A stretch of DNA of 64,000 nt from Caecitellus pseudoparvulus (GCA_965644315.1 CBFFRQ010000051.1:1-64000), one strand, 5' to 3'; positions 20,577 to 46,642 are shown, counted from the stretch's first letter. Notes: generated by a model not told the origin, from the sequence alone. A program made the numbers and translations.

Positions 20577-21302
20577 GCGGTAATTGACACGCCGCAGGAT
20601 GTGTGGCAGGCTAGATTTCCGAGCGCTGGCAGCAAGGTGGAGAGCTGCCTACACAGCTGAAAATGCTGCGAGAGGGTGGCATTGAGCGTGTAGTAGGGTG
20701 GGGTTTGTGCCAGGCTTCTGGATGGACTGAGCAAGGGCGAGCGCACAGCAGGCTTCACGCCAGCGTGTGTTGCTGAGTACGTCGAACTTCAATGACTGCC
20801 CTTGGCTAGGTGTGGCGAGAGGGGCTTGGATGTGCATGTCAGTGATAGGTTGGGCCCACGTGCAGCGTTTCGTCTGGCGGGCCGCAAAGTCCACGCGGAA
20901 CAGGTGCGGGAACTTGTGTCCTGGCCGAAGCACACCATTTCAGGAGATGTGCAGGCTGAACGTGCCAAGGACCCCGACACCCTTTCGCAAGGGATATGTG
21001 CCAGTGGCCATGGTGATGTGGTGCGCGAGCTGTTGGCGCTGGCCGGGCATCAAGCGGTGGACGTGCACGCCGAAGATCGGGGTGCGCCTGAATGCGGGTT
21101 TAGTCTTGCCTGCCGCGACAGTCGTTGGACTGTTGTTCGTGAGTTGTTCGACCTCACTGGGCATCGAGCCGTTCTGCTTCAGGTCCGGCTTGAGGCTGGA
21201 GAGGTGGCTGTGCAGCCAGCCAAGGATGCGGTGTGGTCCGGCACCAGCACTCGACGAGGACGAAAGGCTATGATGCTACTGCGGGCATGCCAGGGAGGGT
21301 GA
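20577..21302 (+). pseudogene. Decayed ankyrin-like repeat gene (family copy F1)
   Basis: Retains the upstream GCGGTAATTG motif, degenerate repeats (VVRELLALAGHQAVDVHAEDRGAPECGF) and an intact C-cap (EVAVQPAKDAVWSGTSTRRGRKAMMLLR). The 5' part has no ATG-led frame and contains stops. Confidence 0.75.
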
Positions 21303-21733
21303 CCAACCCAGGCCTCCCCAGCCTCCTCGCATCTCTTCCACATCCCAGCTACTGCGCTTGCCCAACTTCCCCCTGCCTGCGCAGAGTGGGGGCAGACCAC
21401 TCACGCACACTGCCTGCTGCACAGTAATGGTGCCGTGCAAGAACCAGGCGTGAAATGCATCGGGATGGCGTGTGCTGGAAGACTGTGTGGGAGGACTTGA
21501 AGCGTGGGACTGGGCGAGCCAAAGCAGAGCACTCCTGATTGAGGCAGGGTCGCCACAGGCAATAGACACACTGACAACAACCCAATTCAAATCATACTAC
21601 TCTTAGATTTGTACTTCATGCACAACAATCACGCTTGGTCATCACCTGGACCCTCCATTTTGGGTTGTCGTGTTGTGGAGCGTATGCGGTAATTGACGCA
21701 GGCAGGCAAGGCAGAAAGGCATAGCTGCCCGGC

Positions 21734-22810
21734 ATGGAAGCAGGGAGCGAGGCAGAGCGGTGTGTGGCTCTGTGGCGGGGCGCATGTCGGAATGGTGACG
21801 CCAGTGCGCTGACCCGGATGCTGGGCGTGGGTGGGGCGCCAGGGGGTGATTTGAGTGGGCTGTCGCAGGATGAGACAACTGACGCTCTTCTGGTGGCGTG
21901 CAAGGCGGGTCATGTGGGTCTGTTGCGTGGGTTGCTGGAGTTGACGGGCGATCGTGCAGTGGACGTGCACGTCAGGGATGACATGGGGCCTGAGGCTGGC
22001 TTCCGCCTTGCCTGTGAGAATGGGCACATTGGCGTGGTTCGTGAGTTGCTGGCGTTGACAGGTGATCGAGCCGTGGATGTGCATGCAGGGCGCGAGTACA
22101 TCTTCATTCGTGCTTGTGAATGTGGCCATGTAAATGTCGTGCGCGAGCTGCTGTCAATGACTGGGGATCGTGAGGTCGACGTACATGTTGATGATCGAGA
22201 TGGGCCTGGGGGGGCTTTTTGGTATGCCTGTAAGTTTGGCCATCTGGATGTAGTGCGTGAGTTGCTGGCTTTGAGCGGGCATCGTGAAGTGGATGTCCAT
22301 GCAGGATTCGAGGGCAGCCCTGAAGCAGCCTTCTGGGGTGCCTGTCAAAATGGGCACCTTGGTGTAGTGCGCGAATTGCTGGCTTTGAGCGAGGAACGAA
22401 CTGTGGATGTTCATGCAGGGTTTGATGGCACTCCCGAGGCGGGATTCCGGGGTGCTTGTGCAAATGGGCACCTTGATGTGGTGCGCGAGCTGTTGTCACT
22501 CACAGGGCATCGTGAGGTGGATGTGCACGCGGGCCCTGAGGGCTAGGCCTGAGGCTGGCTTCCAAGACTTGCTTGTGAGTTTGGGCACTGTGAGATGTGG
22601 TGCGTGAGCTGCTGGCGCTGACGGGTGAGCGTGCAGTGGATGTCCACGCCGGTGATGGAGATGGGCCTGAAGCTGGCTTTCGAGGCGCCTGTGAGCATGG
22701 GCACATTGATGTGGTGCGGGAGCTGCTGGCTTTGAGCGGGCATCGTGAAGTCGATGTACATGTTGGACTTGATGGCATTCCTGAGCATGGATTCTGGCTT
22801 GCATGTGCAG
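21734..22810 (+). pseudogene. Ankyrin-like repeat gene copy F2, frameshifted and lacking the C-cap
   Basis: N-cap plus 6 intact repeats to the TAG at 22544-22546, indels at about 22540-22600, two more repeats in another frame, then an abrupt jump at about 22810 into the family's spacer sequence. Confidence 0.75.
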
Positions 22811-23136
22811 CCTGCTGTACAGTGACGGTGCCATGTAAGAACCAGGCGTGAAATGCATCGGGGTGGCGTGTGCTGGAAGACTGTGTGGGAGGACTTGAAG
22901 CGAGAGAGGTTGGGCAAGCCACAGCAAAGCACCCCAGGTTGAGGCGGTGTGGCCACAAACACCAGACACTCGAACCTCTGGCCAAATCCAGACATACTAG
23001 TATTCAAACCATGCTTCATGGACTGCAGGCACGCTTGGACACCACGTGGACCCTTCATTCTGCGCTGTTGCGAAGGGGGCTGAGTGCGGTAATTGCTACA
23101 GTCCAGACCAGGCACACCGTGGCATAGCTGCCCGGC

Positions 23137-24159
23137 ATGCAGTCCAGGAGCGAGGCAGAGCGGTGTGTGGCTCTGTGGCGGGGCGCATGTCGCAATAATG
23201 ACGCCAGTGCGCTGGCACGGATGCTGGGCGTGGAGGGGGCGCCAGAGCTGAGGAGTGGTTTGAGTGGGCTGACGCAGGATGAGACGACTAGCGCCTTTCT
23301 GGTGGCGTGCAAGGCAGGTCATGTGGGTCTGTTGCGTGGGCTGTTGGAGCTGACGGGCGATTGTGCAGTGGACGTGCACGTGGGGGATGAAGCGGGGCCT
23401 GAGGCTGGCTTCCGCCTTGCCTGTGAGAATGGGCACATTGGCATGGTGCGTGAGTTGCTGAAGTTGACCGGGGATAGAACTGTGGATGTACACACAGGGC
23501 CCGAGGGCGAGCCTGAGGCTGGATTTCGGGTTGCATGTGAGAACGGGCACATATGGGTGCTGCATGAGCTGCTTGCACTGACTGGTGACCGTGAGGTAGA
23601 CGTGCATGCCATTTGCGAGGCTGGCTTTCGAGATGCCTGTCAGAATGGGCACTTAAGTGTCGTGCGTGAATTGCTGATGCTGACAGGGCATCGTGAGGTG
23701 GATATTCACTCGGGTCGGGAAGCTGGCTTTCGGTTTGCTTGTGCGGCTGGGCATGTGGATGTGGTGCGAGAGCTGCTTGCCCTGGCTGGAAGTCGGGCCG
23801 TCAACGTGCACGCACCCTTCATGGGTGAGCCTGAGGGTGGCCTTCGACTCGCCTGCCGCAATGGGCACACTGAAGTGGTTCGTGAGCTGCTTGCATTGGT
23901 AGGTAGCCGTGAGGTGGACGTGCACGCCCGATTCAGGGGCAATGCTGGCGCTTCCTTTCGGCTTGCGTGTGCAAGGGAACACGTGGGTGTGGTGCGCGAG
24001 CTGCTCGGCCTCACCGGACTCCGAGCCATCCCCCTTCAAGCACGTCTTCAGGCTGGAGAGGTGGCTGTGCAGCCTGCCAAGGATGCTGTATGGGCCGGCA
24101 CCAGCACTCGACGGGGACGGCGTGGCATGTTGCTGCTGCGCGTATCTGAGCGAAGGTGA
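23137..24159 (+). CDS. Ankyrin-like repeat protein copy F3 (7 repeats)
   Basis: Uninterrupted ORF: N-cap MQSRSEAERCVALWRGAC, repeats FxxACxxGHxxVVRELLxLxGxRxVDVH, and C-cap. Confidence 0.88.
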   Translation: MQSRSEAERCVALWRGACRNNDASALARMLGVEGAPELRSGLSGLTQDETTSAFLVACKAGHVGLLRGLLELTGDCAVDVHVGDEAGPEAGFRLACENGHIGMVRELLKLTGDRTVDVHTGPEGEPEAGFRVACENGHIWVLHELLALTGDREVDVHAICEAGFRDACQNGHLSVVRELLMLTGHREVDIHSGREAGFRFACAAGHVDVVRELLALAGSRAVNVHAPFMGEPEGGLRLACRNGHTEVVRELLALVGSREVDVHARFRGNAGASFRLACAREHVGVVRELLGLTGLRAIPLQARLQAGEVAVQPAKDAVWAGTSTRRGRRGMLLLRVSERR

Positions 24160-24602
24160 CAGACCCAGTCCTTTCCAGCCCCCTCGCATCCAACCCTCTT
24201 CAACCAACCTTCAGCTACTGGTGTGCTTGCCCAACTGCCCCCCGTCTGCGCGGAGTGGGGGTTGGCCACTCACACAGACGGCTCGCTTTACAGTTGCGGT
24301 ACTGTACGTGTATCAGGAGCGGAATGCATTGGCGTGGTGTGTGCTGGCAGGCTGTGAATGGACTTGAAGCTTGAGGTGGAGCCAGGCACAGCAAAGCACC
24401 CTTGCCTGAGGCAGGGTCGCCACAGGCAATGGACACACTGACGACCACCCAAATCAAAACGCGTTTCTATTTGTACTATTGCACATGCACTGCAGGCCCG
24501 CTTGAACACCGCCTGGACCCCCCATTCTGCGCTGTTGCGGAGGGGAGTGTGTGCGGTAATTGGTGCACGCAAACCAGGCACACCGTGGCATAGCTGCCCG
24601 GC

Positions 24603-25997
24603 ATGCAGTCAGATGGCGAGGCAGAGCGGTGTGTGGCCCTGTGGCAGGGTGCATGTCGTAATGACGACGCCAGTGGGCTGGCACGGATGCTGGGCGTGGG
24701 TGGGGCGCCTGGGAGTGATTTGAGTGGGCTGTCGCAGGATGAGACGACGGACGCCTTTCTGGTGGCGTGCAAGGCGGGTCATGTGGGTCTGTTGCGCGGG
24801 CTGTTGGGGTTGACGGGTGAGCGTGCAGTGGATGTGCACGTGGGGGATGGAGCAGGGCCTGAGGCTGGCTTCCTCCTTGCCTGTCAGAGGGGGCACATTG
24901 GTGTGGTTCGTGAGTTGCTGGCGTTGACAGGTGATCGAGAGGTGGATGTCCACGCTGGACCCCCAGGCAGGCCTGAATTCGGGTTTGTTGCTGCCTGCTC
25001 GAGAGGGCACCTGGATGTGGTGCGTGAGCTGCTGGCTCTGACGGGTGATCGAGCCGTGAACGTCCATGCCTGGTTTTGGGGCAAGCCTGAGGCGGGTTTC
25101 ATTCCTGCATGCCGCAACGGACACACTGCGGTGGTGCGCGAGCTGCTTGCTTTGGAGGGCGACCGAGCTGTGGATGTGCATGCTGGGCTTGAGGGTCAGC
25201 CTGAGTACGGCTTCGTTCGCGCATGTGAGAGCGGGCACGTGCATGTGGTTCGCGAGTTGCTGGCTTTGAGCGGGGAACGTACAGTGGATGTACATGCTAC
25301 TGACCGAGGTGGGCCAGAAGCTGGCTTTCGACTTGCCTGCCAGTTTGGTCACATTGATGTTGTGCGTGAGCTGCTTGCTTTGTGCGGCGATCGAGAGGTG
25401 AACGTGCACGCAGCTTGTGAGGGCGAACCTGAGGCCGCGTTCCGGCACGCATGCCAGAATGGGCACGTGGAGGTGGTGCGTGAACTCTTGGCTCTAACTG
25501 GGCACCGCGAAGTGGATGCGCATGCAGGGTTCGGGAGTTGGCCTGGGCCAGGCTTCCAGCTTGCTTGTAAGGATGGACACGTAAATGTGGTGCGCGAGCT
25601 GCTAGCGCTGAGCGGTGCCCGTGAGGTTGACGTACATGTGGGTGATATGCTTGGCCCCGAGGCTGGTTTCCGGGATGCCTGCCAGAATGGCCACGTGGAC
25701 GTTGTCCGCGTGCTTCTGGCGCTTACTGGGCACCGCGAGGTGGACGTGCATGCTGGGCCTGAGGGTGCGCCTGGGTACGGCTTCTTACTTGTCTGTCGAA
25801 ATGGGCATTTAGAAGTGGCGCGAGAGCTGCTCGGCCTCACTGGGCATCGAGCCGTCCCGCTCCAGACTCGGCTTGAAGCTGGACAGGTGGCCGTTCAGCC
25901 AGCCAAGGATGCGGTTTGGACCGGCACCAGCACTCGGCAAGGGCGAGGTGCCATGGTGCAGTTTCACGTAGCTTGCCGATCAACAGTGCCGAAGTAA
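24603..25997 (+). CDS. Ankyrin-like repeat protein copy F4 (10 repeats)
   Basis: Uninterrupted 464-aa ORF with 38-aa (114-nt) repeats between the conserved caps. Confidence 0.9.
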   Translation: MQSDGEAERCVALWQGACRNDDASGLARMLGVGGAPGSDLSGLSQDETTDAFLVACKAGHVGLLRGLLGLTGERAVDVHVGDGAGPEAGFLLACQRGHIGVVRELLALTGDREVDVHAGPPGRPEFGFVAACSRGHLDVVRELLALTGDRAVNVHAWFWGKPEAGFIPACRNGHTAVVRELLALEGDRAVDVHAGLEGQPEYGFVRACESGHVHVVRELLALSGERTVDVHATDRGGPEAGFRLACQFGHIDVVRELLALCGDREVNVHAACEGEPEAAFRHACQNGHVEVVRELLALTGHREVDAHAGFGSWPGPGFQLACKDGHVNVVRELLALSGAREVDVHVGDMLGPEAGFRDACQNGHVDVVRVLLALTGHREVDVHAGPEGAPGYGFLLVCRNGHLEVARELLGLTGHRAVPLQTRLEAGQVAVQPAKDAVWTGTSTRQGRGAMVQFHVACRSTVPK

Positions 25998-26286
25998 AGT
26001 TGGTAGGTCCCACCGCAGCCTTTCCCTGCGAGTAAGAAGAGTGGAGGTTGTGGCTCAAGTTTGGTCCTGTGTGCACCATGCCGCCAAGCGGACGTCCTCA
26101 AACCGATATGGAGGTCAAATACCATGCTCAGAATGCAATTTAGTCGCATTTATGCTGAGGGAGTTCCATAGTGCGCGTTCCTGCCCCCTGTGAAGCCCCA
26201 TACCACCGTGCTACTCGCTGCGCGGGGCGTCGGTTTGAGTTTCCGCAAGGAGCTGCAGCCGCACTCTTTGCAGCCCTGCGGCCAGC

Positions 26287-27656: not shown

Positions 27657-27870
27657 ACACCGTTTGCGCATGATGTGCCTGGGACTCGTGTCTGCATATC
27701 CTGAGACAGACCAGGTTCGCGATTCCCTTGCTGTACGTGCTTGAGCCAAGATGCTGAGCTTCAGTGATTCGCTGCAAAAGCTTGCAGCCGACCAATTCAC
27801 ACCGCATGAACGGCATTTGCGAGGGCCGGGCCACCCTTGTTGTTAAGTGCCAAGGGCTTGTGTGTCAGGC

Positions 27871-29604: not shown

Positions 29605-29606
29605 CG

Positions 29607-32571: not shown

Positions 32572-32676
32572 AGAGGCAAAGCTCGCTGCTGCTGTTCCTC
32601 CAAGTATGGTGTGCACCAGGGAGGTAGCGGCACGCCAGCGGGCGTCAAGGTGCATTGCAGCGCTTCCGCGCCAAGC

Positions 32677-35600
32677 TCACTGGGCGACAGTGCGGGGGCG
32701 GCTGAAGCCTGCAGTCTTGTCGGGGCCCTTGGCCGTGACGACTTCCTGCGCCTGCACGCCGCCGATGCCGACCGTGGCCTGGGCCAGAGCGGCCCGTGCA
32801 GCCACACGGCGGGCCGGGGCTGGCTGCCCCTCCCCCTCCCCGCCCTCACCACCCGCCTTGGACGTCTGGGCGCTCTGCATGTCTTCCAGCGTCTCCCCCC
32901 GCCGCTTGTGGCACACCTTGGCCAGCCTCCCGTTCGCCAGCGTGATCACGCCCACGTTGCGCAGGACTGTGCCCAGACTCGCCGCCTGCTCCTCAGGCAG
33001 AGGCACTGCGCCAGAGGCCAGCACGTGCCGCAGCAGGGTGTCCATGGCCGCCGGGGCGGGCGGCACCTGCCCCGTCGCGCCCTGGTGCAGAATGCACGCT
33101 GGCACTCGCCCACCATTGCCTGCCACCACCACGCCACGCAGCGCCACCGTCGTGCGTCCGTGACGGCTCTGGCTGTACTCCACCACATCACCCTCACGCA
33201 GGGGCTGACCAGTGGCAATGGAGGCGGTGACAGCGCTGGGCTCGCCCAACGACACAGCGCACAGAGCTGGTGGTGCGCTGGCGTCAGCGCCGTCCTCCTC
33301 ACCGGCCGCCGCATCCGCTCCTGCCTTCCCTGTGATCTGGGACGCATCAGCCAGGGTGCGGTAAGTTTGGGACGCCATCAGCTTCACTGCCGCGTCCTTG
33401 CTCACAGTCCACAGGCTGCCAGGGGCTGCCGCGAGCTCTGCAGCGGTGGCCACCACCTGGGCAGCCGTGTCTTCCGGCAGCTCCAGAGCCTGCGTCAGGC
33501 TGGCCGTGGCCTGGGGAGCTGCCAGGCGCGCGCGGACCTCCCGGATGACGTCTTCGGGCAGGCGCACGATCTCCTGGACGTTTGCGGTGCCCTTGGAGAT
33601 GTTCATGACGATGCCGGTGTGCCGTTGGCCGGGTGCGGGCGTGTGCACCATGCAGCACCGCACGCCAAACCCGCGGGACGCGGTCTCTGCACCTGCTCGT
33701 GCCCAGCCAGAGGCGGCGGTGGGGGCGCTGCCGCTGGACCCGTCGTCCTCCGCCACGACAAAGGCAACGACGTCGTGAGACACAAAGGGGGGCATGCCGC
33801 CCGGGGCCATCGGCTGGCTGGGCAGCACTGGCACGGCGTGGGCCACAGCGAAGTTCAGGAGAGTCTTGGGGGGGATGCTGCCCAGCTCGCCGCCCTTGAC
33901 AACGGTCAAGTTGGGCATGCTCTCCACTGCAGCCTTCACGGCTGCCTCGGCAGGGCCAGTGGCAACCCCCGTCACCTCCACCACACCGCCTGTGAAGGCG
34001 GGGTACTTCACAGGCACACGGGGCCTGACACCGCCCCGCTGGCGCCCGAAGGTGCCGCTGCTGCCCTGCATCGGTGCAGAAGGCTCCCGCGTGATGCGCC
34101 CCAGGTACACGCGCTCGGACACCTTGCAGGGCTTGGAGCAGGGGACGCCCCCCTTGGGGGTGACTGCGGCCTTGCGTGCCGCACGCACGGCCTTGCCCTG
34201 CTCGGGTGTCAGGTGGGCAATGTTCTTGGCCACGGCCGTGCCCAGCTGGGCGTCGTGCTGCACGACAAAGTCCACGAACTTGCCCACGTGCAGGGGCCCG
34301 CACCCCGCCACGCTGTCGGCTGCTGAGAACGGCACGCTGCTCCTCGCGCCGTCACTGAAGTCTGCGTTCAGCGGCGTGATGCTGCCGGAGGGCACGAACG
34401 GCTCTGGTGCCTCGGCTGCCGGGCCTCGCTTGGGCTTGCGTGACACGAATTCCACCACGCCCCAGGTGTGCCCCGGCGCGGGGCCTGGTGTGGCCGCCGC
34501 AGGGGGGGCAGCACCTGCCTCCCCTGCAGGGCCCCAGTCGCCCGTGTTGCCCCAGGCCCCGTCTTCCCCGCGGCCTGAGCTAGCAGCGGGGGTCACTGGC
34601 GCCAGCTGCACGCCACTTGCCTCCACTGACCCATCCAGGGCGCTGCGCTTGAGGAAGCAGGAGCAGGGCACTCGGCCGCCTTCCGCCTGCAGCAGACTGG
34701 TCACAGTGTCCTTGGAGACAGTTGAGGAGCGCTCGCCGCGCAGGGACACTTCCCACAGCGGCACTTGCAACGTGTGTGACGCGGGCAAGCGCCCTGGCGC
34801 GCGCGGCCCGAACGGCTGTGTCAGCCACGCTGCAGCGATGGTGGCGGCGCCGGCGTCCTGCACGTCGCCCGTCACGGCGCCCAGGCCCGGGACACAGGGA
34901 TGCACGGCGGTGCCGGTGGGGGGGGGTGGAGACGCACGCCAGCCCTTGGGTACTGACACGGTGGTCTTGCCAGGGTGCGTCTCCACCACCAGGCCGTACG
35001 CCGCCGACACCGCTGCAACCAGGCACTGGCTGGCGTGAGCCACAGTCGTGGCGGCGCCAGGCGCCACGACGGGTGCACCTGCCACTGGCGTGGCCCAGTC
35101 AGGCAGGAGCACATGCGAGGTGCCTGGGTCCGTGAGCAGACACACCAGAGCGTGGACCACGGCACCGTCTGGCCGCGCACTGGCCGAGGCAGACTCCCAC
35201 GGCGCCAGCACATTGCACGCCACCCCGGCAGCCTTGCCCTCCTCACCCAGGGAGCGGCGCGCAAAGTCTGCGTGCTGGTGCAGGGCCTTGGCCTCTGCCC
35301 CCGGCAGCGCCTTGCCTGCCTCCAGGCGGGCCGTCCCAGCCGGCAACGCCGCGCCAGTGGGTGCGTCGCCCAACAGCAGCGACAGTAGGTCGGCAGGGGG
35401 CGGTCCGGCGGCGGCACCAGGCAGGACCCACTCAGGTGCGCCCTGCACCGCTGCCACTGCTTCGGGCGACAGCACCAGTGTCGCGGCAGAGTCTCCGACC
35501 GCCGTGACGTGGGCCTGCACGCGGCCGCAGCCGAAGCTCAGGTCGGTCTTCTGTTTGGACAGGTACGCCGTGAAGGAAGGCGTCAACCACTTGCGCACGC

Positions 35601-38463: not shown

Positions 38464-38748
38464 GTCAACCGCGTTTCACCAGCGTTCCGCGCTGTCAACA
38501 AGCTCTCCAACCCACTAAGCCACGCATGCAATCCAAAGAAACGAGAAATGTCTCACAATACTACCTGATCGTGTCCAGATTTGATTTTAGATTTCTAGGT
38601 CTCCAGGTCAAGGTGGAAGACCACCCCTGCTAGTTCTCAATCTCTGTCGAAAAACTAGAGCGCTCTGTTTGCATCCTCCAAACCAGACAAAGTGACCAGC
38701 GTAGATAAGCACACGGGGAATCAAGCAGCATCATTTGCATTGAGCTAA

Positions 38749-39789
38749 TCACCTTCGCTGGGATGCCCGCAGCAGCAGCATGGCTCGCCGCCCCTGCAGA
38801 GTGCTGGTGCCGGCCCACACTGCATCTTTGGCTGGCTGCACAGCCACCTGTCCAGCGGCAAGCCGTGTCTGAAGCGGGACGGCTCGATGCCCAGTGAGGC
38901 CAAGCAGCTCACAAAGAACATGCGCATGCCTGTTGTGGCATGCAAGGCGAAAGCCGTAGCAAGGCATGCCCCTGACCCCAGCATGCACATCCACCTCACG
39001 ATGCCCCGTCAACGTCAGCAGCTCGCGCACCACGTCAATGTGCCCATGCAGACAAGCACGTCGAAAGCCGTACTCAGGCCCGTTTCGATCTCCAGCGCGG
39101 ACGTCCACTTCGCGATCCCCCGCCAGAGCCAGCAGCTCACGCACCACATCCACATGCCCATTCTGACAGGCACGTCGGAAGCCGGCCTCTGGCCCATCAA
39201 AATCACCAGCATGCACGTCCACCTCCCGATCCCCCGCCAGAGCCAACAGCTCGCGTACCACAGCCAAGTGTCCGTTCGCACAGGCAAGCCGGAAGCAAGC
39301 CTCAGGACCACCTCGATCACCTGCATGCACATCCACAGTGCGATGATCGCTCAGAGCGAGTAGCTCTCGCACCACCTCCACACGCCCGTAAGCACAGGCA
39401 AGTCGAAATCCAAAATCAGGCTTCATATCGGGACCAGCGTGCACGTCCACCTCGCGTTCTCCGCCCAGTGCCAGAAGGTCACGAACCACATTAATGTGCC
39501 CAAACTCACAAGCATGCCGGAAGCCAGCCTCAGGCCCACCCCAATCTCTTGCATGTACATTCACTTCATGATACCCACTCAGTCCCAACAGCCCACGCAA
39601 CAGTCCCACATGACCCGCCTTGCACGCCACCAGAAAGGCGAGAGTTGTTTCATACTGCGACAGCCCACCCAAATCACCCCCAGGCGCCCCACCCACACCC
39701 AGCATCCGCGCCAGCGCACTGGCGTCACCTTCGTGACACGCACCCCGCCACACGGCCACACACCGCTCTGCCTCGCCTCCTGCCTCCAT
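38749..39789 (-). CDS. Ankyrin-like repeat protein copy R1 (7 repeats)
   Basis: Family ATG context ccgcccggcATG at 39789, N-cap MEAGGEAERC, repeats, and C-cap ending MLLLRASQRR. Confidence 0.9.
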   Translation of the reverse strand: MEAGGEAERCVAVWRGACHEGDASALARMLGVGGAPGGDLGGLSQYETTLAFLVACKAGHVGLLRGLLGLSGYHEVNVHARDWGGPEAGFRHACEFGHINVVRDLLALGGEREVDVHAGPDMKPDFGFRLACAYGRVEVVRELLALSDHRTVDVHAGDRGGPEACFRLACANGHLAVVRELLALAGDREVDVHAGDFDGPEAGFRRACQNGHVDVVRELLALAGDREVDVRAGDRNGPEYGFRRACLHGHIDVVRELLTLTGHREVDVHAGVRGMPCYGFRLACHNRHAHVLCELLGLTGHRAVPLQTRLAAGQVAVQPAKDAVWAGTSTLQGRRAMLLLRASQRR

Positions 39790-40244
39790 GCCGGGCGGCT
39801 GTGCCACGGTGTCCCTTGCGTGGACTGAAGCAATAACCGCACACGCACTCTTCCGCAACAGCGCAGAATGGAGGTTCCAGGCGGTGTCCAAGCATGCCTA
39901 AGATGCATGAAATTCAATTGCAACAGTGTGAACAGAGGTTCAATATTTTTTGGCGGGGGTCAGAGTACCCATTGCCTCTGGTCACCCCGCCCCAATCAAG
40001 GGTGCTCTGCTGTGGCTCGCAAAACCTCAAGCTCCAAGCCACCACACAGCCTGCCAGCAAACGCCACTCCGGTGCACCCTGCATACCACGCTCATACGAC
40101 ATCGCCACTGTACAGCGAGCTGCCTGCGTGGGGTGTGCACCTCCACTCCGCGCAGGCAGGGGGCAACGGGCAAGCGCAGGAGCTGCAGGCTGGTTATAGT
40201 GGGCGGTCAACGAGATGCGAAGAGGCTGGGGAGGTCAAAGCTCA

Positions 40245-41627
40245 TCACCTTCGCTGGGATGCACGCAGCAGTAGCATGGCACCTCGCCCCTGACGAGTGC
40301 TGGTGCCGGCCCAGACGGCATCCTTGGCGGGCTGCACAGCCACTTGCCCAGCGGCACGTCGAGCCTGGATGGGAATGGCTCGATGCCCCGTCAGCGCCAA
40401 GAGCTCACGCACCACAGCCAGGCGCCCTTTATAATGGGCAGCCTTGAAGGCATACTCAGGCACACCCCTGACTCCAGCATGCACATCCACCGTCGCGTGT
40501 CTTGCCAGCTCGAGAAGCAAACGCGCCACATCCAACTGCCCCTGCACACAGGCAAGCTTGAAAGCAGCCTCACGTTCGCCCTCTGGCCCAGCATGCACAT
40601 CCACCTCACGATCGCCACTCAATGAAAGCAGCTCGCGGACCACGTCAACATGTCCGAACTGGCAGGCAAGCTTGAAAGCAGCCTCACGTTCGCCCTCTGG
40701 CCCAGCATGCACATCCACCTCACGATCGCCACTCAATGAAAGCAGCTCGCGGACCACTTCAACATGTCCGTACTCGCAAGCAAGCTGGAAGCCTAACTCA
40801 GGCCAGCCCTCAGGCCCAGCGTGCACATCCACCTCACGGTGTCCGCTCAATGCCAGCAGTTCCCGAACCACATCAATATGCCCGGCCTGACAAGCAAGCT
40901 GGAAGGCTATCTCAGGATCGCCCTCTGGCCCAGCGTGCACGTCCACAGCTCGATGTCCGCTCAGAGCCAGGAGCTCACGTACGACATCAAGGTGCCCATT
41001 CATACAGGCACCCCGGAAAGCAGCCTCAGGACCATCTTCATCATCCGTATGCACATCAACTTCTCGGGCACCGCTCAGTGCCAGCAGCTCGCGCACCACA
41101 CCAACGTGACCATTTGCACAAGCACGCCGGAAGGCACCCTCGGACCAGCATTGATAGTCAGCATGCACGTCCACTTCACGCTGCCCCGTCAATGCTAGCA
41201 GCTCCCGCACCACGTCAATATGCCCATTCTCACAGGCAAGCTGGAAGCCCTGCTCACACCAGGTCTTTGGCCCGGCATGTACGTCCACCTCGCGTTCTCC
41301 GCTCAGTGCAAGAAGCTCACGAACCACATCAATGTGCCCGTTCTCACAGGCAGCCCGGAAGCCAGCCTCAGGCCCGGCCCAATCCCCCACATGCACGTCC
41401 ACCTCACAATCGCCCGTCAGCTCCAACAGCCCACGCAACAGACCCACATGACCTGCCTTGCACGCCACCAGAAAGGCGTCCGTAGTCTCATCCTGTGTCA
41501 GCCCACTCAAATCACCCCCTGGCGCCCCACCCGCGCCCAGCATCCGCGCCAGCGCACCAGCATCACTATTACGACATGCGCCTCGCCACATGACCACACA
41601 CCGCTCTGCCTCGCCATCTGGCTCCAT
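40245..41627 (-). CDS. Ankyrin-like repeat protein copy R2 (10 repeats)
   Basis: ATG 41627 (MEPDGEAERC) and the same cap-repeat-cap architecture. Confidence 0.9.
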   Translation of the reverse strand: MEPDGEAERCVVMWRGACRNSDAGALARMLGAGGAPGGDLSGLTQDETTDAFLVACKAGHVGLLRGLLELTGDCEVDVHVGDWAGPEAGFRAACENGHIDVVRELLALSGEREVDVHAGPKTWCEQGFQLACENGHIDVVRELLALTGQREVDVHADYQCWSEGAFRRACANGHVGVVRELLALSGAREVDVHTDDEDGPEAAFRGACMNGHLDVVRELLALSGHRAVDVHAGPEGDPEIAFQLACQAGHIDVVRELLALSGHREVDVHAGPEGWPELGFQLACEYGHVEVVRELLSLSGDREVDVHAGPEGEREAAFKLACQFGHVDVVRELLSLSGDREVDVHAGPEGEREAAFKLACVQGQLDVARLLLELARHATVDVHAGVRGVPEYAFKAAHYKGRLAVVRELLALTGHRAIPIQARRAAGQVAVQPAKDAVWAGTSTRQGRGAMLLLRASQRR

Positions 41628-42061
41628 GCCGGGCGGCTGTGCCACGGTGTGCCTGGCCTGGCCTGTAGCAATTACCGCACACACTCCCCTCCGTGACAAC
41701 CCAGAATGAAGGTTCCAGGCGGTCTTCAAGCGGGTCTGCAGTGCGTGAGATGCAAAAAAAGTTTTGGTATTCTTAAATTTAACCGATAACCAAAGTGTCT
41801 GTCGCCTGTGGCCACTCCGACTCAATCAGGAGTGCTCTGCTTTTTCTCGCCAGGAATCAAGCTCCAAGCCACCACACAGTCTGCCAGCACACGCCCCCTC
41901 GATGCACCCTGCACATGGCATTGGCACATTACTGTCCCTATACAGCAGAATACGTGAGTGAGCGGCCCACGCCCACTCCGCGCAGGCAGGGGGTAGTTGA
42001 GCAAGCGCACAAGCTGGGGTGTGTGCAAGAGATGCGAAGAGGCTGGAAAGGACTGAGCGCA

Positions 42062-43222
42062 TCACCTTCGTTGGGATACCCGCAGCAGTAGCATGAGCCG
42101 ACGCCCTTGATGTATGGGTGTCCCTTGCCACTCTGCCTCTTTCAGCTGTGTGTATGTGAGCGCGCCAGGTCGAGTCTGCGCTGACTGGGGCACTGCTCGG
42201 GCACCACGCAGTCTGAACAGCTCGCGCAGCACATCCACATGGCCACGCTGGCATGCCGCCCGATACCCTGCATCACCATCGTGCCTATTGTCGGCGTGCA
42301 CGTCCACCTCCCGCTCGCCAGTCAGCGCCAGCAACTCGCGCACGACCCTTGCACGGCCAAATGCGCACGCCCCACGGAAGGCCGCTTCACGTCCACCCTG
42401 ATCCGATGCATGCACGTCCACTCGCCTGGCACCCTGGAGTGCGAGCAGTTCACGCACGACAGCAACGTGGCCACCGCGGCATGCAAGCCGCAGCGCAGCT
42501 TCTGCTCCGTCTACATCGGCGGCATGAACATCCACCTCTCTTTCACCCGACAGATGCAACAGCTCGCGCACCACACTGACGTGTCCCCTTGCGCAAGCCC
42601 ACTGAAACGCTGCCTCACGTATGCCCCATCCGCCGGCGTGCACGTCCACCTTTTGCTCGCCAGTCAGAGCCAGCAACTCGCGCACCACGTGCACTTGCCC
42701 GGCACAGCATGCAGAGCGGAAGGCAGCCTGCGGACCCAGACGATCTCCTGCCGGCACGTACACTGAGCGACGTCCTTTGAGGGCGAGCAGCTCACGCACC
42801 ACCTCCAGGTGCCCATTCGCACACGCATCGCGAAAGCCAGCGTAGCTTCCTTGCGCATCGTAGGCATACGTGTTCACCTCACGATCCCCTGTCAACGCCA
42901 GCAGCTCCCGCACAACGTCCACGTGCCCGCCAGCACAGGCTGCCCTGAAGCCATACTCGGGGAAGCGCCCTTTCATCGCATGGACATCCACTACTTGCTC
43001 GCCGTTGAGGGCCAGCAAAGCTCGCAGCAGGCTGACGTGCCCGTCCTCGCACGCCACGAAGAAGCCCTGCGTTGTGTCCTCCGCAAACAGACCCTCCAGT
43101 GCATGCCGCCCTCGGCGAGTGTGGCCCTTCTCCACCATCGCCAACAGTGCGTCAGCATCACGATTGCGGCATGCAGTTGCCCACAGCGCGCATGCTTCCA
43201 CCGTGGCTGACACTGCGGCCAT
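42062..43222 (-). CDS. Ankyrin-like repeat protein copy R3, divergent subfamily (8 repeats)
   Basis: ATG 43222 (MAAVSATVEACALWATACRNRDA). Caps are diverged, but the 38-aa repeat and the W..GRR.MLLLRVSQRR tail are the same. Confidence 0.88.
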   Translation of the reverse strand: MAAVSATVEACALWATACRNRDADALLAMVEKGHTRRGRHALEGLFAEDTTQGFFVACEDGHVSLLRALLALNGEQVVDVHAMKGRFPEYGFRAACAGGHVDVVRELLALTGDREVNTYAYDAQGSYAGFRDACANGHLEVVRELLALKGRRSVYVPAGDRLGPQAAFRSACCAGQVHVVRELLALTGEQKVDVHAGGWGIREAAFQWACARGHVSVVRELLHLSGEREVDVHAADVDGAEAALRLACRGGHVAVVRELLALQGARRVDVHASDQGGREAAFRGACAFGRARVVRELLALTGEREVDVHADNRHDGDAGYRAACQRGHVDVLRELFRLRGARAVPQSAQTRPGALTYTQLKEAEWQGTPIHQGRRLMLLLRVSQRR

Positions 43223-43649
43223 GCTGTGCCAGCTCTCGATTTCCGCAGTGACCCGCAAGGGTGGCGAGTTACGGTAAGGGGCCAAGAAGTCCTGCACCAC
43301 CGGAAGCGTGGGTACAAAGCAGTTAACGAAAGGTATTCACGAGTATGGAGTGCCTGGAAGGTCAGGCAACTTGAATGTGTGCCCGATGGTGGCTGTGCGG
43401 GAGCAACCGCACCCTCGTTGTCAAGCCCCTTCGAGCCACGCCACTGGCATCGACTGAAGCTCGGACAAGTGATATTTGTCCCAGTTTTCTCTCGCATGGC
43501 TTGCGTAGAGTCAAGCTTGCCTCAGTGCCTTCTACCACTGAGTGATGTGCAAGGAATCAAGCCGCCCTTTGTGGCGAGTGCACGTCACAAGCCCCAAGAT
43601 TGAGTGACACCCGCTAACCAAAGTCAACGTGATGCAAACATATATGCAT

Positions 43650-44465
43650 TCAGCTTCCTCTGGTTGATGTCCGCAGCAGCAGCATGGCGACCCGCCCCTG
43701 CCGTGTGCTGGTGCCGGCCCACACCGCATCCTTGCCTGGCTGCACAGCCACCTTTCCCCCCTCCTGTCGTGTCTGGAGGGGAATTGCTCGGTGCCCAGTC
43801 AGAGCAAGCAGCTCTCGCACCACATCAATGTGCTCCTTCTCACAGGCAGCTCGGAAGGCCGCCTCTGGCCCATCATGATCATCAGCATGCACATCCACCT
43901 CCCGATCCCCCGTCAGAGCGAGGAGCTCACGCACCACATCAACGTGCCCATTCGCACACGCAAGCCGGATGCCAACCTCAGGACCACCTCGATCACCAGC
44001 ATGCACATCCACCGCGCGATGGCCGCTCAGAGTGAGAAGCTCCCGCACCACCTCCACACGCCCGTAGGCACAGGCAAGGCGGAACCCAAACTCAGACTCC
44101 TCATCGGGACCAGCGTGCACGTCCACCTCGCGTTCTCCGCTCAGTGCCAGAAGCTCACGAACCACACCAATGTGCCCAAACTCACAAGCATGCCGGAAGC
44201 CAGCCTCAGGCCCGGCCCAATCTCTTGCATGTACATCCACTTCATGATGCCCACTCAGCCCCAACAGCCCACGCAACAAACCCACATGACCCGCCTTGCA
44301 CGCCACTAGAAAGGCGCTAGTCGTCTCATACTGCGTCAGCCCACCCAAATCACCCCCTGGCGCCCCCTCCACGCCCAGCATCCGTGCAAGTGCACTAACG
44401 TCACCATCGCTACATGCGTCTCCCCACAGGGCCACACACCGCTCTGCCTCGCCTCCTGACTGCAT
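43650..44465 (-). CDS. Ankyrin-like repeat protein copy R4 (5 repeats)
   Basis: ATG 44465 (MQSGGEAERC). Repeats 1-4 correspond in order to those of R1. Confidence 0.88.
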   Translation of the reverse strand: MQSGGEAERCVALWGDACSDGDVSALARMLGVEGAPGGDLGGLTQYETTSAFLVACKAGHVGLLRGLLGLSGHHEVDVHARDWAGPEAGFRHACEFGHIGVVRELLALSGEREVDVHAGPDEESEFGFRLACAYGRVEVVRELLTLSGHRAVDVHAGDRGGPEVGIRLACANGHVDVVRELLALTGDREVDVHADDHDGPEAAFRAACEKEHIDVVRELLALTGHRAIPLQTRQEGGKVAVQPGKDAVWAGTSTRQGRVAMLLLRTSTRGS

Positions 44466-44914
44466 GCCGGGCGGCTGTGCCTGTCTGTGCCACGGTCTGT
44501 CTGCCTTTCGCAATTACCGCACACACACCCCTCCGCAACAGCGCAGAATGAAGGGTCCAGGCGGTATCCAAGCGTGTCGGCAGTGCGTGAAATGCAAATT
44601 GAATGCTGGTATGCTTGGAATTTGGCGGGGCTCGTTGTGTTTGTCGCCTGTGGCCACCCCGCCTCAACCATCGGCGATTCGCTGTGGCTCGCCCACCTTC
44701 ACGCTCTCAAGTCCCCGCAGCCTGCCTGAACACACCGCCCCGATGCACGCCGTTCATGGCACTGGTACAGTACCACTACTGTACGGTGAGGTTTTCGAGC
44801 GGGGTGTCCGCCTCCATTTCAAGCAGGCAGGGGGCGACGGGCAAGCGCAGGAGCTGCAGGCTGGTTGTAGTGGGCGGAGACGAGACGTGAGGAAGCTGGG
44901 AAGGTCCAACCCGT

Positions 44915-46642
44915 TCATCTTCGCTGGGATGCCCGCAGCAGTAGCATGGCATCTCGCCCCTGACGAGTGCTGGTGCCGGCCCACACTGCATCCTTGGCGG
45001 GCTGCACAGCCACCTCTCCAGCGGCAAGCCGGACCTGAAGCGGGACAGCCCGGTGCCCAGTGAGGCCAAGAAGCTCGCGCACCACATCCTCATGACCGTT
45101 CCCACATGCCCACCGGAAGGCAGCCTCGGACAGGTATCCAAAGGCAACAACATGCACATCTACCTGACGCTGCCCAGTCAATGACAGCAACTCCCGCACC
45201 ACATCAACATGCCCATTCGTACAAGCCTCCCGAAAACCAGCATGTGGCCCACAGTCATCCCTTGCATGCACTTTCACGGCACGATCCCCAGTCAGTGCCA
45301 GCAACTCCCGCACCACGTCGATATGCCCGTTCTTACAGGCAAGCTGGAAGCCTGCCTCAGGCCCGTTCTGATCTCCAGCATGCACATCCACCTCACGATC
45401 ACCACTCAATGAAAGCAGCTCACGCACCACGTCAACATGTCCGTTCTGACAGGCAAGCTGGAAGCCTTGCTCGCGCTCGCCCTCTGGCCCAGCGTGCACA
45501 TCCACCTCACGATCGCCACTCAAAGCCAGCAGCTCGCGGACCACGTCAACATGTCCGTTCTGACAGGCAAGCTGGAAGCCTTGCTCGCGCTCGCCCTCTG
45601 GCCCAGCGTGCACATCCACCTTACGATGCCCACTCAAAGCCAGCAGCTCCCGAACTACATCCAGGTGCCCGACCTGACAAGCAAGCTGGAAGCCCCACTC
45701 AGGATCGCCCTCACAACCAGCATGCACGTCCACCTCACGATCGCCACTCAATGAAAGCAGCTCACGCACCACGTTAACACGTCCGAAGTGACAGGCAGCC
45801 ACAAAACCTGCCTCACGCTCGCCCTCTGGCCCAGCGTGCACATCCACCTCACGATGCCCGCTCAGAGCCAGGAGTTCACGCACGATAGCAAGGTGCCCAA
45901 TCACACAGGCACCCCGGAAACCAGCCTCAGGGCCATCGTCATCATCCGCATGCACATCAACTTCTCGGGCACCGCTCAGAGCCAGAAGCTCGCGCACCAC
46001 ATCTAGGTGTCCGTTTTGACAAGCACCCTGGAAGGCACCCTCGGGCCAGCATTGATAGTAAGCATGCACGTCCACCTCACGATCACCACTCAATGACAGC
46101 AACTCTCGCACCACGTCAATATGCCCATTCTCACAGGCAAGCTGGAAGCCTTGCTCAGACCAGTTCCATGGCCCAGCATGCACATCCACCTCGCGAGCGC
46201 CGCTCAGAGCCAGCAGCTCACGCATCACAGAGAGGTGTCCATTCGCACAGGCAGCTCGGAAGCCAGCCTCAGGCTGGCCCTCGGGACCAGCGTGTACGTC
46301 CACCTCGCGTTCTCCGCCCAGTGCCAGCAGCTCACGAACCACATCAATGTGCCCAAACTCACAGGCAGCCCGGAAGCCAGCCTCAGGCCCGGCCCGATCC
46401 CCCACATGCACGTCCACCTCACAATCGCCCGTCAGCTCCAACAGCCCACGCAACAGACCCACATGACCCGCCTTGCACGCCACCAGAAAGGCGTCTGTCG
46501 TCTCATCCTGCGTCAGCCCGCTCAAATCACCTCCTGGCGCCCCACCCACACCCAGCATCCGTACAAGCACACTGGCATCGCCATTGCGACATGCACCCCG
46601 CCACAGAGCCACACACCGCTCCGCTTCGCCTCCTGCCTCCAT
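44915..46642 (-). CDS. Ankyrin-like repeat protein copy R5 (13 repeats)
   Basis: 575-aa uninterrupted ORF that shares diagnostic repeats with R2. Confidence 0.9.
   Translation of the reverse strand: MEAGGEAERCVALWRGACRNGDASVLVRMLGVGGAPGGDLSGLTQDETTDAFLVACKAGHVGLLRGLLELTGDCEVDVHVGDRAGPEAGFRAACEFGHIDVVRELLALGGEREVDVHAGPEGQPEAGFRAACANGHLSVMRELLALSGAREVDVHAGPWNWSEQGFQLACENGHIDVVRELLSLSGDREVDVHAYYQCWPEGAFQGACQNGHLDVVRELLALSGAREVDVHADDDDGPEAGFRGACVIGHLAIVRELLALSGHREVDVHAGPEGEREAGFVAACHFGRVNVVRELLSLSGDREVDVHAGCEGDPEWGFQLACQVGHLDVVRELLALSGHRKVDVHAGPEGEREQGFQLACQNGHVDVVRELLALSGDREVDVHAGPEGEREQGFQLACQNGHVDVVRELLSLSGDREVDVHAGDQNGPEAGFQLACKNGHIDVVRELLALTGDRAVKVHARDDCGPHAGFREACTNGHVDVVRELLSLTGQRQVDVHVVAFGYLSEAAFRWACGNGHEDVVRELLGLTGHRAVPLQVRLAAGEVAVQPAKDAVWAGTSTRQGRDAMLLLRASQRR

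What the first reader, a model, noticed from the sequence alone, without database searches (positions are those of the whole stretch)
20577..46642. Two tandem arrays of modular 38-aa ankyrin-like genes resembling a natural DARPin-like diversified binder repertoire
Seen: nine genes (two broken) share an architecture of fixed N-cap (MxxxxEAERCVALWxGAC...ETTxA), a near-invariant first repeat (FLVACKAGHVGLLRGLL), a variable repeat count (intact genes: 7, 10, 7, 10, 8, 5, 13) and a fixed C-cap. The repeat scaffold F-x-x-A-C-x-x-G-H-x-x-V-V-R-E-L-L-A-L-x-G-x-R-x-V-D-V-H-A-x-x-x-x-x-P-E-x-G is nearly constant. Positions 2-3, 6-7 and the 5-residue loop after DVHA differ in almost every unit (loops GPPGR, WFWGK, GLEGQ, TDRGG, GFGSW, DYQCW, GPKTW). 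Established: canonical ankyrin repeats are 33 aa and bind through helix 1 and the beta-hairpin loop, the positions randomised in engineered DARPins. Inference: this is a germline-encoded, combinatorially diversified intracellular recognition family (no signal peptide or TM), analogous to VLR/NLR repeat repertoires and plausibly directed at viruses, parasites or prey.
Basis: partly seen in the sequence, partly recalled or inferred. Interest (0 to 1): 0.88.

Follow-up and report, generated by a model that had tools for sequence, protein, structure and literature searches.

The report
Large 38-residue ankyrin gene family
A marine single-celled eukaryote carries at least 150 tandemly duplicated genes for ankyrin-repeat proteins built from an unusual 38-residue unit with fixed ends and a variable presumed binding face, but those variable sites evolve no faster than neutral, so an immune-like recognition role remains an untested idea.

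Summary
The window holds nine paralogous ankyrin (ANK) genes, two of them broken, in two arrays. Each has an N-cap, a conserved first unit, 5-13 units of 38 residues (114 bp) and a conserved C-terminal tail of about 45 residues. They belong to a family with at least 150 tail matches across the 30.6-Mb genome of a marine stramenopile that is probably heterotrophic. The scan has flagged this family and other ANK families many times on other DNA of this genome.

An MSA-based AlphaFold model (pLDDT 88.6) is an ANK solenoid. By HMMER alignment, 38 = 33 + 4 (after helix 2) + 1 (hairpin). The variable positions (2, 3, 6, 7, 30-34, 37) include the equivalents of all six DARPin-randomised sites.

The diversifying-selection claim is not supported. 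Three methods give omega of about 0.1 for the scaffold and 0.5-0.8 for the variable classes. The six most variable sites, chosen post hoc, reach about 1.1. No site is significantly above 1. Units show no concerted evolution (66% identity within genes), there is no signalling domain, and there are no RNA data.

Best reading: a lineage-specific birth-and-death family of cytosolic binding adaptors with a variable groove and a constant tail. An immune or prey-recognition role is possible but untested.

The parts
20802..21302 (+). A1b: pseudogene remnant. It keeps the last units and the C-tail; the upstream part back to about 20577 is degenerate and carries stops.
   Evidence: tail match at 21156-21293
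21734..22790 (+). A2b: broken gene. N-cap plus 6 units end at a stop (22546). Two further units follow in another frame, and the C-tail is lost.
   Evidence: one search reports 1 TGA and 1 TAG inside the match
23137..24159 (+). A3: intact gene of 340 aa with 7 units, two of them the short 34-aa form.
24603..25997 (+). A4: intact gene of 464 aa with 10 units.
38749..39789 (-). R1: intact gene of 346 aa with 7 units. This is the protein that was modelled.
40245..41627 (-). R2: intact gene of 460 aa with 10 units.
42062..43222 (-). R3: intact, divergent member of 386 aa with 8 units. Its N-cap, tail and upstream region all differ from the others.
43650..44465 (-). R4: intact gene of 271 aa with 5 units. 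It is the paralogue of R1.
44915..46642 (-). R5: intact gene of 575 aa with 13 units. It is the paralogue of R2.
38752..38895 (-). Example of the conserved C-terminal tail (…HRAiPLQxRLaAGxVAVQPAKDAVWaGTSTRqGRRamxLLRa…). There is no Pfam match.
39637..39789 (-). Example of the N-cap, about 51 aa before the first unit. It is helical in the model and has no Pfam match.
40563..40790 (-). Recent duplication of a single 114-bp unit: R2 units 7 and 8 are 96% identical at the nucleotide level.
24483..24602 (+). Example of the conserved 120-nt upstream region (…GCGGTAATTG…GCCCGGCATG). All window copies share it except R3.

Best explanation
These genes belong to a lineage-specific multigene family of soluble, cytosolic ankyrin-only proteins in a marine stramenopile protist.

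Shown:
- Each protein is an ANK solenoid of 4 to 19 or more units.
- The unit has grown to 38 residues: 33 + 4 after helix 2 + 1 in the hairpin.
- The scaffold, the N-cap with the first unit, and a basic helical C-terminal tail of about 45 residues (DAVWxG…GRRxxxLLR) are held by strong purifying selection.
- The helix-1 face and the hairpin tips of the internal units drift at roughly the neutral rate.
- The family grows by tandem and block gene duplication and by gain or loss of whole 114-bp units. It decays by stops and frameshifts.

Inferred:
- The variable groove gives each paralogue its own protein-binding specificity.
- The constant tail, and possibly the constant first unit, connect all members to one shared partner, location or process. 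On this reading the proteins are a repertoire of adaptors.

What they bind is unknown, and so is whether that serves defence, feeding or ordinary cell biology.
For: - Family size and spread: the tail matches at 150 scored places (269 candidates) on dozens of contigs, and R1 gives more than 220 matches. I parsed 45 complete genes with 4-15 units and saw ORFs with 19 or more units.
- Fold: AF2 with a 40-sequence MSA gives pLDDT 88.6 and pTM 0.84. The Foldseek top hits are FEM1B, DARPins, NOMPC and ankyrin.
- Unit anatomy: the HMMER alignment to a designed ANK protein places a 4-residue and a 1-residue insertion.
- Selection: scaffold omega is 0.09-0.12, variable class 0.51-0.55, caps 0.41.
- Tail conservation: about 19 tail positions are at least 90% conserved in A1. 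The core is shared with 34-aa relatives.
- First unit: its helix-1 face is conserved (entropy 0.7-0.9 bits against 2.0-2.9 in internal units).
- Mode of growth: R1/R4 and R2/R5 are collinear with unit indels, and R2 units 7 and 8 are 96% identical. Two pseudogenes sit in the window.
- Cellular context: the neighbours are UGGT, DNA polymerase alpha and an ABCA transporter.
- No signal peptide or TM segment.
Against: - There is no expression evidence. The only hint is a 242-nt contig identical to R4 in a run labelled metatranscriptomic but flagged 'probably DNA'.
- Binding, partners and the role of the tail are all inferred. The tail has no Pfam match and is modelled at only pLDDT 50-70.
- Near-neutral surface evolution would fit equally well if the surface does nothing specific.
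- Codon usage (GC3 0.59 against 0.80 in the neighbours) may mean low expression.
Confidence: 0.6

Rival explanations
1. One reading: an innate-immunity-like recognition repertoire, aimed at viruses, parasites or prey, whose binding face is driven by diversifying selection.
For: - The family is very large and tandemly arrayed, with birth-and-death turnover and varying unit number.
- Variable sites coincide with the canonical ANK binding face.
- Aromatic residues recur at hypervariable positions. For example, W, Y and F are frequent at positions 3, 31, 32, 34 and 37, which does not look like a purely mutational composition.
- At the same structural positions the first unit is conserved, so the variation in internal units is at least tolerated selectively.
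- Giant viruses of marine flagellates carry mirror-image ANK arrays: BsV has 148 copies with 4-17 repeats (PMC5871332).
- 13 of the 17 nonsynonymous differences to environmental contigs fall on variable positions.
Against: - Omega is at or below about 1 by three methods, and no site is significantly above 1.
- There is no NACHT, TIR, death or other signalling domain.
- There is no unit shuffling or concerted evolution.
- Nothing is known about induction, and no RNA data exist.
Confidence: 0.17
2. Substrate adaptors of a ubiquitin ligase. The variable ANK array would recruit substrates, and the constant C-terminal tail would act as a degenerate 'box' docking onto a cullin-type E3. The models are ASB proteins (ANK + SOCS box), poxvirus ANK/PRANC proteins and FEM1.
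For: - The architecture is the same: a variable ANK array plus a short, strongly conserved helical module at the very C-terminus. The stop lies 19 residues after the WxG motif in 29 of 45 genes.
- The best structural matches are FEM1B substrate receptors, although this mainly reflects the ANK fold.
Against: - Pfam finds no SOCS box, F-box or PRANC match in the tail even at E <= 10.
- The only BC-box-like stretch (PLQxRL) is not conserved in the 34-aa relatives, which keep only WxG…GRRxxVLxR.
- No complex prediction was run.
Confidence: 0.1
3. A functionally redundant family that grew by neutral tandem duplication. Only foldability would be selected, and the variable sites would simply be unconstrained surface with no paralogue-specific targets.
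For: - Omega at the variable sites is 0.5-1.1, which neutrality alone explains.
- The scaffold-versus-variable pattern is generic to ANK repeats.
- Codon usage is relaxed, with C-ending and T-ending codons used almost interchangeably and GC3 about equal to the local spacer GC.
- Roughly 10-15% of tail matches lie in short or stop-containing frames.
Against: - Strong purifying selection on the scaffold, tail and first unit in at least 45 intact genes (omega about 0.1) argues that each copy is kept functional.
- The residue composition at variable sites is non-random.
- The family and its tail are kept in related environmental lineages.
Confidence: 0.2
4. Genes captured from, or belonging to, an integrated giant virus.
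For: - The nearest ESM-Atlas feature clusters are almost all ANK proteins of Nucleocytoviricota.
- Two 'viral metagenome' proteins match at about 40% identity.
- GC and codon usage differ from the flanking genes.
Against: - The arrays sit between ordinary cellular genes: UGGT, DNA polymerase alpha with stramenopile best hits, and ABCA.
- They occur on dozens of contigs.
- A scan of IMG/VR found no relative.
- The family's own spacers share the lower GC, so this is a local compositional feature.
Confidence: 0.04

Closest known systems
Canonical ankyrin repeats and designed ankyrin repeat proteins (DARPins, consensus ANK such as PDB 4qfv, 4o60, 1n0r)
   Same: - Same fold: helix-helix-hairpin solenoid.
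- Pfam ANK families match above their cut-offs.
- The A-x-x-G-H and V-V-x-x-L-L core is kept.
- The non-conserved positions are the ones randomised in DARPins.
   Different: - The period is 38 residues, not 33, with some 34-residue units.
- TPLH is replaced by PEaGF.
- There is a 4-residue insertion after helix 2 and one extra hairpin residue.
- The proteins have their own N-cap and a non-ANK C-terminal tail.
Highly internally conserved ANK, WD and TPR repeats of fungal NOD-like receptors (Dyrka et al. 2014, PMC4986451)
   Same: - Repeat arrays with a fixed scaffold and variability on the concave face.
- Repeat-number variation.
- Large paralogous repertoires thought to serve non-self recognition.
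   Different: - Fungal repeats are more than 85% identical within a gene and evolve in concert. Here units are 66% identical and their nearest relatives sit in other genes.
- Fungal sites show positive selection; here none was detected.
- Fungal proteins carry NACHT or NB-ARC plus effector domains; these carry none.
Tandem ankyrin paralogue arrays of giant viruses (for example 148 copies in Bodo saltans virus, PMC5871332)
   Same: - More than a hundred tandem, same-direction ANK-only genes with 4-17 repeats and recent duplications.
- The virus arrays are interpreted as the product of an arms race.
   Different: - These genes are cellular and flanked by housekeeping genes.
- They are GC-rich, use 38-residue units and have a specific tail.
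- No relatives were found in IMG/VR.
ANK proteins with a C-terminal ligase-docking box (ASB/SOCS box, poxvirus ANK/PRANC, FEM1)
   Same: A variable ANK array followed by a short conserved C-terminal helical module. FEM1B is the top structural match.
   Different: No SOCS, F-box, PRANC or VHL-box signal in the tail. The partner is unknown.
Variable lymphocyte receptors of jawless fish and plant or animal NLR repeat repertoires
   Same: Solenoid repeat proteins with variable unit number and a variable concave face, used as a recognition repertoire.
   Different: Those use LRR, not ANK. VLRs are assembled somatically from cassettes, and NLRs have a NOD switch. There is no sign of either here.

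Membership tests
Ankyrin repeat superfamily | Significant match to the Pfam ANK models | tested here: met
   Ank_2 E 1.7e-43, 1.7e-51 and 9.4e-33, all above the 27.3-bit cut-off
Ankyrin repeat superfamily | Helix-turn-helix plus beta-hairpin units stacked into a solenoid | tested here: met
   The AF2 model (pLDDT 88.6) shows two helices and an E--E bridge per unit. Foldseek hits ANK proteins at prob 1.00.
Ankyrin repeat superfamily | Period of 33 residues with a TPLH motif | tested here: not met
   The period is 38 residues, some units 34. PEaGF replaces TPLH, and insertions of 4 and 1 residues are located by the HMMER alignment. This is a length variant, not a different fold.
Diversified recognition repertoire (DARPin-like, VLR/NLR analogue) | Variability concentrated on the ligand-binding face | tested here: met
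   High-entropy positions 6, 7, 30, 32, 33, 35 (plus 2, 3, 31, 34, 37) align with DARPin positions 13, 14, 33, 2, 3, 5.
Diversified recognition repertoire (DARPin-like, VLR/NLR analogue) | Positive (diversifying) selection, dN/dS above 1, at those sites | tested here: not met
   SLAC-like counts give omega 0.4-1.2 with no significant site. NG86 on 19 pairs gives 0.55 and 0.53. The per-site maximum is 1.06. The GY94 ML model gives 0.51, 0.77 and 1.09.
Diversified recognition repertoire (DARPin-like, VLR/NLR analogue) | Attached signalling or effector domain (NACHT, NB-ARC, TIR, death fold) or a membrane anchor | tested here: not met
   Only ANK families match. The caps have no Pfam match at E <= 10. 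There is no TM segment. NACHT is scarce in the genome and not linked to this family.
Diversified recognition repertoire (DARPin-like, VLR/NLR analogue) | Repeat-number or allelic polymorphism between strains | tested here: inconclusive
   Only short Logan contigs could be laid. Environmental runs differ from R3 by about 2% and give no depth at 44346-44936, but paralogue cross-mapping cannot be excluded.
Fungal-NLR-type internally conserved repeats | More than 85% identity between units of one gene, with concerted evolution | tested here: not met
   Mean identity within a gene is 66% aa and 68% nt. Only 1.8% of within-gene unit pairs reach 85%. The nearest unit is in the same gene for only 29 of 217 units.
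ANK + C-terminal box E3 adaptors (ASB, PRANC, FEM1) | A recognisable SOCS box, F-box, PRANC or VHL box | tested here: not met
   No such Pfam match in the tail at E <= 10
ANK + C-terminal box E3 adaptors (ASB, PRANC, FEM1) | Binding of the tail to Skp1, Elongin C or a cullin | not tested
   No complex prediction was run, because the prior was too low to justify the single job.
Giant-virus ANK arrays | Location in a viral genome or a viral insertion | tested here: not met
   The neighbours are cellular, and IMG/VR holds no relative.

The most novel reading that the evidence does not exclude
The family is a previously undescribed type of protist recognition system. Hundreds of ANK-only 'binders' would each have a different groove and would all signal or dock through one constant C-terminal motif (DAVWxG…GRRxxVLLR) rather than a NOD or TIR domain. 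They would be used by a bacterivorous marine flagellate against giant viruses, intracellular bacteria or prey, as the host-side counterpart of the ANK arrays of giant viruses. Near-neutral average omega would then hide episodic selection on individual paralogues.
Probability: 0.15. Interest if true: 0.85.

Novelty: new variant of a known kind. Interest (0 to 1): 0.45.

Why it matters
If the adaptor-repertoire reading holds, about 0.7-1% of a compact protist genome is devoted to one family of modular binders. That would give a tractable entry into how uncultured-type marine grazers recognise other proteins, whether of viruses, prey or their own.

The family would also provide:
- a natural, very stable-looking 38-residue ANK scaffold;
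- a new short C-terminal motif whose partner could define a pathway.

As it stands, the finding is a well-documented lineage-specific gene-family expansion. Its most exciting claim, selection-driven diversification, failed the test that could be run.

Tried and rejected
- AF2 without an alignment gave a poor model (pLDDT 60.8, loops below 50). It was replaced by the MSA-based model.
- Naming the organism failed. Cluster look-ups carry no names, and the contig records are uninformative. Only DNA polymerase alpha places it among stramenopiles, with 53-60% identity to named species. The LHC search found nothing, but the controls could not ring, so absence is weak evidence.
The census therefore rests on the genome search counts, which are lower bounds, and on 45 parsed genes.
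- The IMG/VR scan found no relative. The JGI metagenome scan found only 13 distant 34-residue relatives.
- Pfam on the tails and N-caps at E <= 10 found nothing. A profile search of the tail against 1.84 billion representatives found only 35 proteins. The match lies at the C-terminal end in all but two of them, and none was scanned for domains, so no new domain context emerged.
- I considered a strand-specific deaminase or transcription-associated mutation as the cause of the C-to-T shift at third codon positions. I rejected it because the spacers and UTRs show no strand skew and the shift is not confined to CpG.
- The IQ-TREE partition run did not print omega. I re-ran each site class separately on the common tree.
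- No complex prediction was run, because no candidate partner had enough prior support.
- Read laying could use only short contigs, so it cannot show expression level, transcript ends or reliable structural variants.


Full report
**Observation**

The ORF lists and translations show nine paralogous genes in two arrays.
- On the + strand lie A1b (remnant, 20802-21302), A2b (21734-22546, broken), A3 (23137-24159) and A4 (24603-25997).
- On the - strand lie R1 (38749-39789), R2 (40245-41627), R3 (42062-43222), R4 (43650-44465) and R5 (44915-46642).

A motif-anchored parse gives 7, 10, 7, 10, 8, 5 and 13 units in the intact genes, spaced 38 residues apart with a few 34-residue units. Tandem Repeats Finder reports 114-bp periods throughout both arrays. 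Pfam calls them ankyrin repeats (Ank_2 E 1e-33 to 1e-51).

A2b stops after unit 6, continues for two units in another frame and has lost its tail. A1b keeps only its last units and the tail. The stretch from 26.3 to 38.5 kb between the arrays holds unrelated genes.

**Scaffold and variable sites**

In 46 internal window units, A4, C5, G8, R14, L16, L17 and V25 are invariant. Positions 2, 3, 6, 7, 20, 22, 30-34 and 37 carry 1.9-3.0 bits of entropy. The same profile appears in 180 units taken from other contigs (r = 0.98).

**Genome context and family size**

The window is contig 51 of a 30.6-Mb, 215-contig assembly. Its neighbours are ordinary nuclear genes: UDP-glucose:glycoprotein glucosyltransferase, DNA polymerase alpha, a kinase, a UDP-glycosyltransferase and an ABCA transporter. 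All are read as single long ORFs.

DNA polymerase alpha has its best named matches, at 53-60% identity, in diatoms, Triparma, Cafeteria, Ectocarpus and Nannochloropsis. Unnamed metagenomic proteins reach 76-77%. The organism is therefore a stramenopile without a close named relative.

No light-harvesting-complex gene was found, though this is weak evidence because the controls could not ring. Marine metagenomes hold parts of the locus. A heterotrophic marine flagellate is the likely source.

R1 finds more than 220 matches in the genome. The 48-residue tail alone finds 150 scored places out of 269 candidates, on dozens of contigs and mostly in tandem clusters. At about 1.3 kb per gene this is at least 0.2 Mb, or 0.7% of the genome or more.

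From the stretches I could fetch I parsed 45 complete genes with 4-15 units. I also saw open frames with 19 or more units and one of 1867 residues. The scan's notebook shows that this family, and other ANK families of the same genome, have been flagged many times on other DNA. Some of those other families are fused to a pseudokinase or to novel domains.

**Structure**

A single-sequence AlphaFold run was poor (pLDDT 60.8). With a 40-sequence alignment of paralogues (A1), R1 folds with pLDDT 88.6 and pTM 0.84. Each unit has two helices, a short 3-10 turn and a hairpin. The tail is helical but modelled at only pLDDT 50-70. Foldseek against the PDB returns FEM1B, DARPins, NOMPC, ankyrins and EHMT1, all ANK solenoids.

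HMMER aligns the units to designed ANK proteins such as 4qfv:
- 'VDVHA' aligns with 'ADINA'.
- 'AC..GH' aligns with 'AA..GH'.
- A four-residue insertion (a18-g21) follows helix 2, and one extra residue (a37) sits in the hairpin. So 38 = 33 + 4 + 1.
- The DARPin-randomised positions 33, 2, 3, 5, 13 and 14 correspond to positions 30, 32, 33, 35, 6 and 7 here, and all six are variable.

Positions 3, 6 and 7 lie at i, i+3 and i+4 of helix 1, that is, on one helical face. The variable sites therefore map to the canonical binding surface. That surface is also the generic variable surface of ANK repeats, and it is the reason those DARPin positions were chosen (established knowledge).

**Selection**

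Three independent calculations agree.

| Method | Scaffold | Variable classes | Caps |
|---|---|---|---|
| SLAC-like parsimony count on a tree of 209 distinct units | 0-0.2 | 0.4-1.2 per site, none significantly above 1 | - |
| Nei-Gojobori on 19 non-overlapping closest gene pairs | 0.12 | 0.55 (14 variable sites); 0.53 (a-priori DARPin-equivalent set) | 0.41 |
| GY94+F3X4 likelihood per site class on a common tree | 0.086 | 0.51 (14 variable sites); 0.77 (DARPin-equivalent sites); 1.09 (six most variable, chosen post hoc) | - |

In the 12 youngest pairs the highest per-site pN/pS is 1.06, at position 6, and it is not significant.

Differences to environmental contigs give 17 nonsynonymous and 15 synonymous changes. 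Of the 17, 13 fall on variable positions, which again gives omega near 1 there.

The genes are thus clearly maintained, because the scaffold and tail are under strong constraint. The binding-face positions evolve at about the neutral rate, and positive selection is not shown.

Two observations stop me from calling those sites simply unconstrained:
- Their residue composition is non-random, with W, Y and F recurrent.
- The same helix-1 positions are conserved in the first unit of every gene (entropy 0.7-0.9 bits against 2.0-2.9).

**Mode of evolution**

Units within a gene are only 66% (aa) or 68% (nt) identical, barely more than units of different genes (63% and 65%). For 188 of 217 units the nearest relative lies in another gene. 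There is therefore no concerted evolution and no cassette shuffling. This differs from fungal NLR repeats, where identity exceeds 85% and positive selection is detected (PMC4986451).

R1/R4 and R2/R5 are collinear block duplicates, with units 82-98% identical over the collinear stretches (R1 units 1-4, R2 units 1-8) and whole units inserted or deleted. R2 units 7 and 8 are 96% identical, and R5 units 8-10 are 83-88% identical. Paralogues also share 120 nt of upstream sequence, except R3. Growth is by tandem or block gene duplication plus gain and loss of 114-bp units. Decay is by stops and frameshifts.

**The caps**

The tail consensus is LGLTGHRAiPLQxRLaAGxVAVQPAKDAVWaGTSTRqGRRamxLLRa. In 29 of 45 genes the stop lies 19 residues after the WxG motif. 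The tail has no Pfam match even at E <= 10.

A region-restricted search found it in only 12 other proteins, all small marine-metagenome ANK proteins. Broader relatives with 34-residue units keep the core DAVWxG…GRRxxVLxRA with an insert of about 29 residues, or a shorter W-x-GRR-x-x-L-x-L-R-R ending. They also occur in tandem clusters.

A profile of the tail finds only 35 cluster representatives among 1.84 billion. The match lies at the C-terminal end in all but two of them. The tail is thus a rare, lineage-restricted but strongly conserved module. I infer that it is the constant functional end of the proteins.

**Other checks**
- No transmembrane-grade hydrophobic segment or signal-like N-terminus.
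- NACHT domains are few in the genome and unlinked to this family.
- IMG/VR holds no relative, although ESM-Atlas feature neighbours are mostly giant-virus ANK proteins.
- No RNA run holds the locus. One 242-nt contig identical to R4 occurs in a seawater run labelled metatranscriptomic but flagged as probably DNA. That is a hint only.

**Codon usage**

The family's GC3 is 0.57-0.64 against 0.79-0.86 in the neighbours. Third-position C falls from 0.40 to 0.21 and T rises from 0.10 to 0.285, while G and A hardly change. The same holds in 39 family genes on other contigs.

I tested a strand-specific mutational cause. The shift occurs in all dinucleotide contexts. The spacers between the genes have GC 0.57 and no strand skew. 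It is therefore a codon-level effect, best read as a relaxed choice between C-ending and T-ending codons in a locally lower-GC region. This is compatible with low or conditional expression, which is an inference.

**Verdict**

The most likely account (0.6) is a lineage-specific birth-and-death family of cytosolic ANK adaptors with a paralogue-specific groove and a constant docking tail. The alternatives are:
- a defence or prey-recognition repertoire under diversifying selection (0.17);
- a neutral expansion with no paralogue-specific targets (0.2);
- an E3-ligase adaptor mechanism (0.1);
- viral origin (0.04).

I found no description of this family in the searched literature on marine stramenopile genomes. 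The MAST and Cafeteria genome papers returned by the search do not discuss ankyrin expansions.

I rate it a new variant of a known kind: an ANK multigene expansion with a 38-residue unit and a new C-terminal motif.

Noticed in passing
window 21734-25997 and 38749-46642; also 39 family genes on loci L033-L052: The ANK family uses atypical codons. GC3 is 0.57-0.64 against 0.79-0.86 in neighbouring housekeeping genes. Third-position C is halved and T nearly tripled, while G and A are unchanged. Spacers show no strand skew, so this is a codon-level effect, perhaps from low or conditional expression.
   Followed up: yes
window 23017-23136, 24483-24602, 39790-39909, 41628-41747, 44466-44585, 46643-46762: About 120 nt upstream of each start codon is conserved among the paralogues (…GCGGTAATTG…GCCCGGCATG). 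R3 is the exception and has an unrelated upstream region. This may be a shared promoter or 5'UTR element.
   Followed up: partly
window 46276 (R5 unit 2): Contigs of runs X3 (same organism label as the best holder) and X5 read A instead of G here. That would turn CAG into TAG, a premature stop in R5. It may be an allele, an assembly difference or a cross-mapped paralogue.
   Followed up: no
window 44346-44936: The environmental or other-strain runs X5 and X7 each give no contig depth at 95% likeness over most of this stretch (X7: 44346-44739; X5: 44543-44936), which spans the R4 5' end, the spacer and the R5 3' end. Run X3 covers it. X5 and X7 also share a joint 43958>45717. This could be a structural difference between strains or only paralogue noise.
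   Followed up: no
window 32677-38463 (-): A 1928-aa open frame in the most GC-rich part of the window (0.71) has no Pfam match. Another reader called it UNR/CSDE1-like. I did not examine it.
   Followed up: no
P0036, P0048 (UniRef 'viral metagenome'); L063: Giant-virus-metagenome ANK proteins match the family at about 40% identity and end in a basic-hydrophobic RLVWxRR-like C-terminus that recalls the family's GRRxxVLLR tail. L063 comes from a 57-kb contig; the 5.7 kb fetched has 65% GC.
   Followed up: no
L055 (JGI contig Ga0138347_10446730) and L053, L054, L060: Distant relatives with 34-residue ANK units and W…RRxxLxLxR endings also form tandem multigene clusters in other marine metagenome contigs, up to six genes in 9 kb.
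   Followed up: partly
G000:C54:235316-242287 and other long frames listed: Some family members are very long. One open frame of 1867 aa starts with a family N-cap and contains at least 19 consecutive 38-residue units; others reach 1069-1329 aa.
   Followed up: partly
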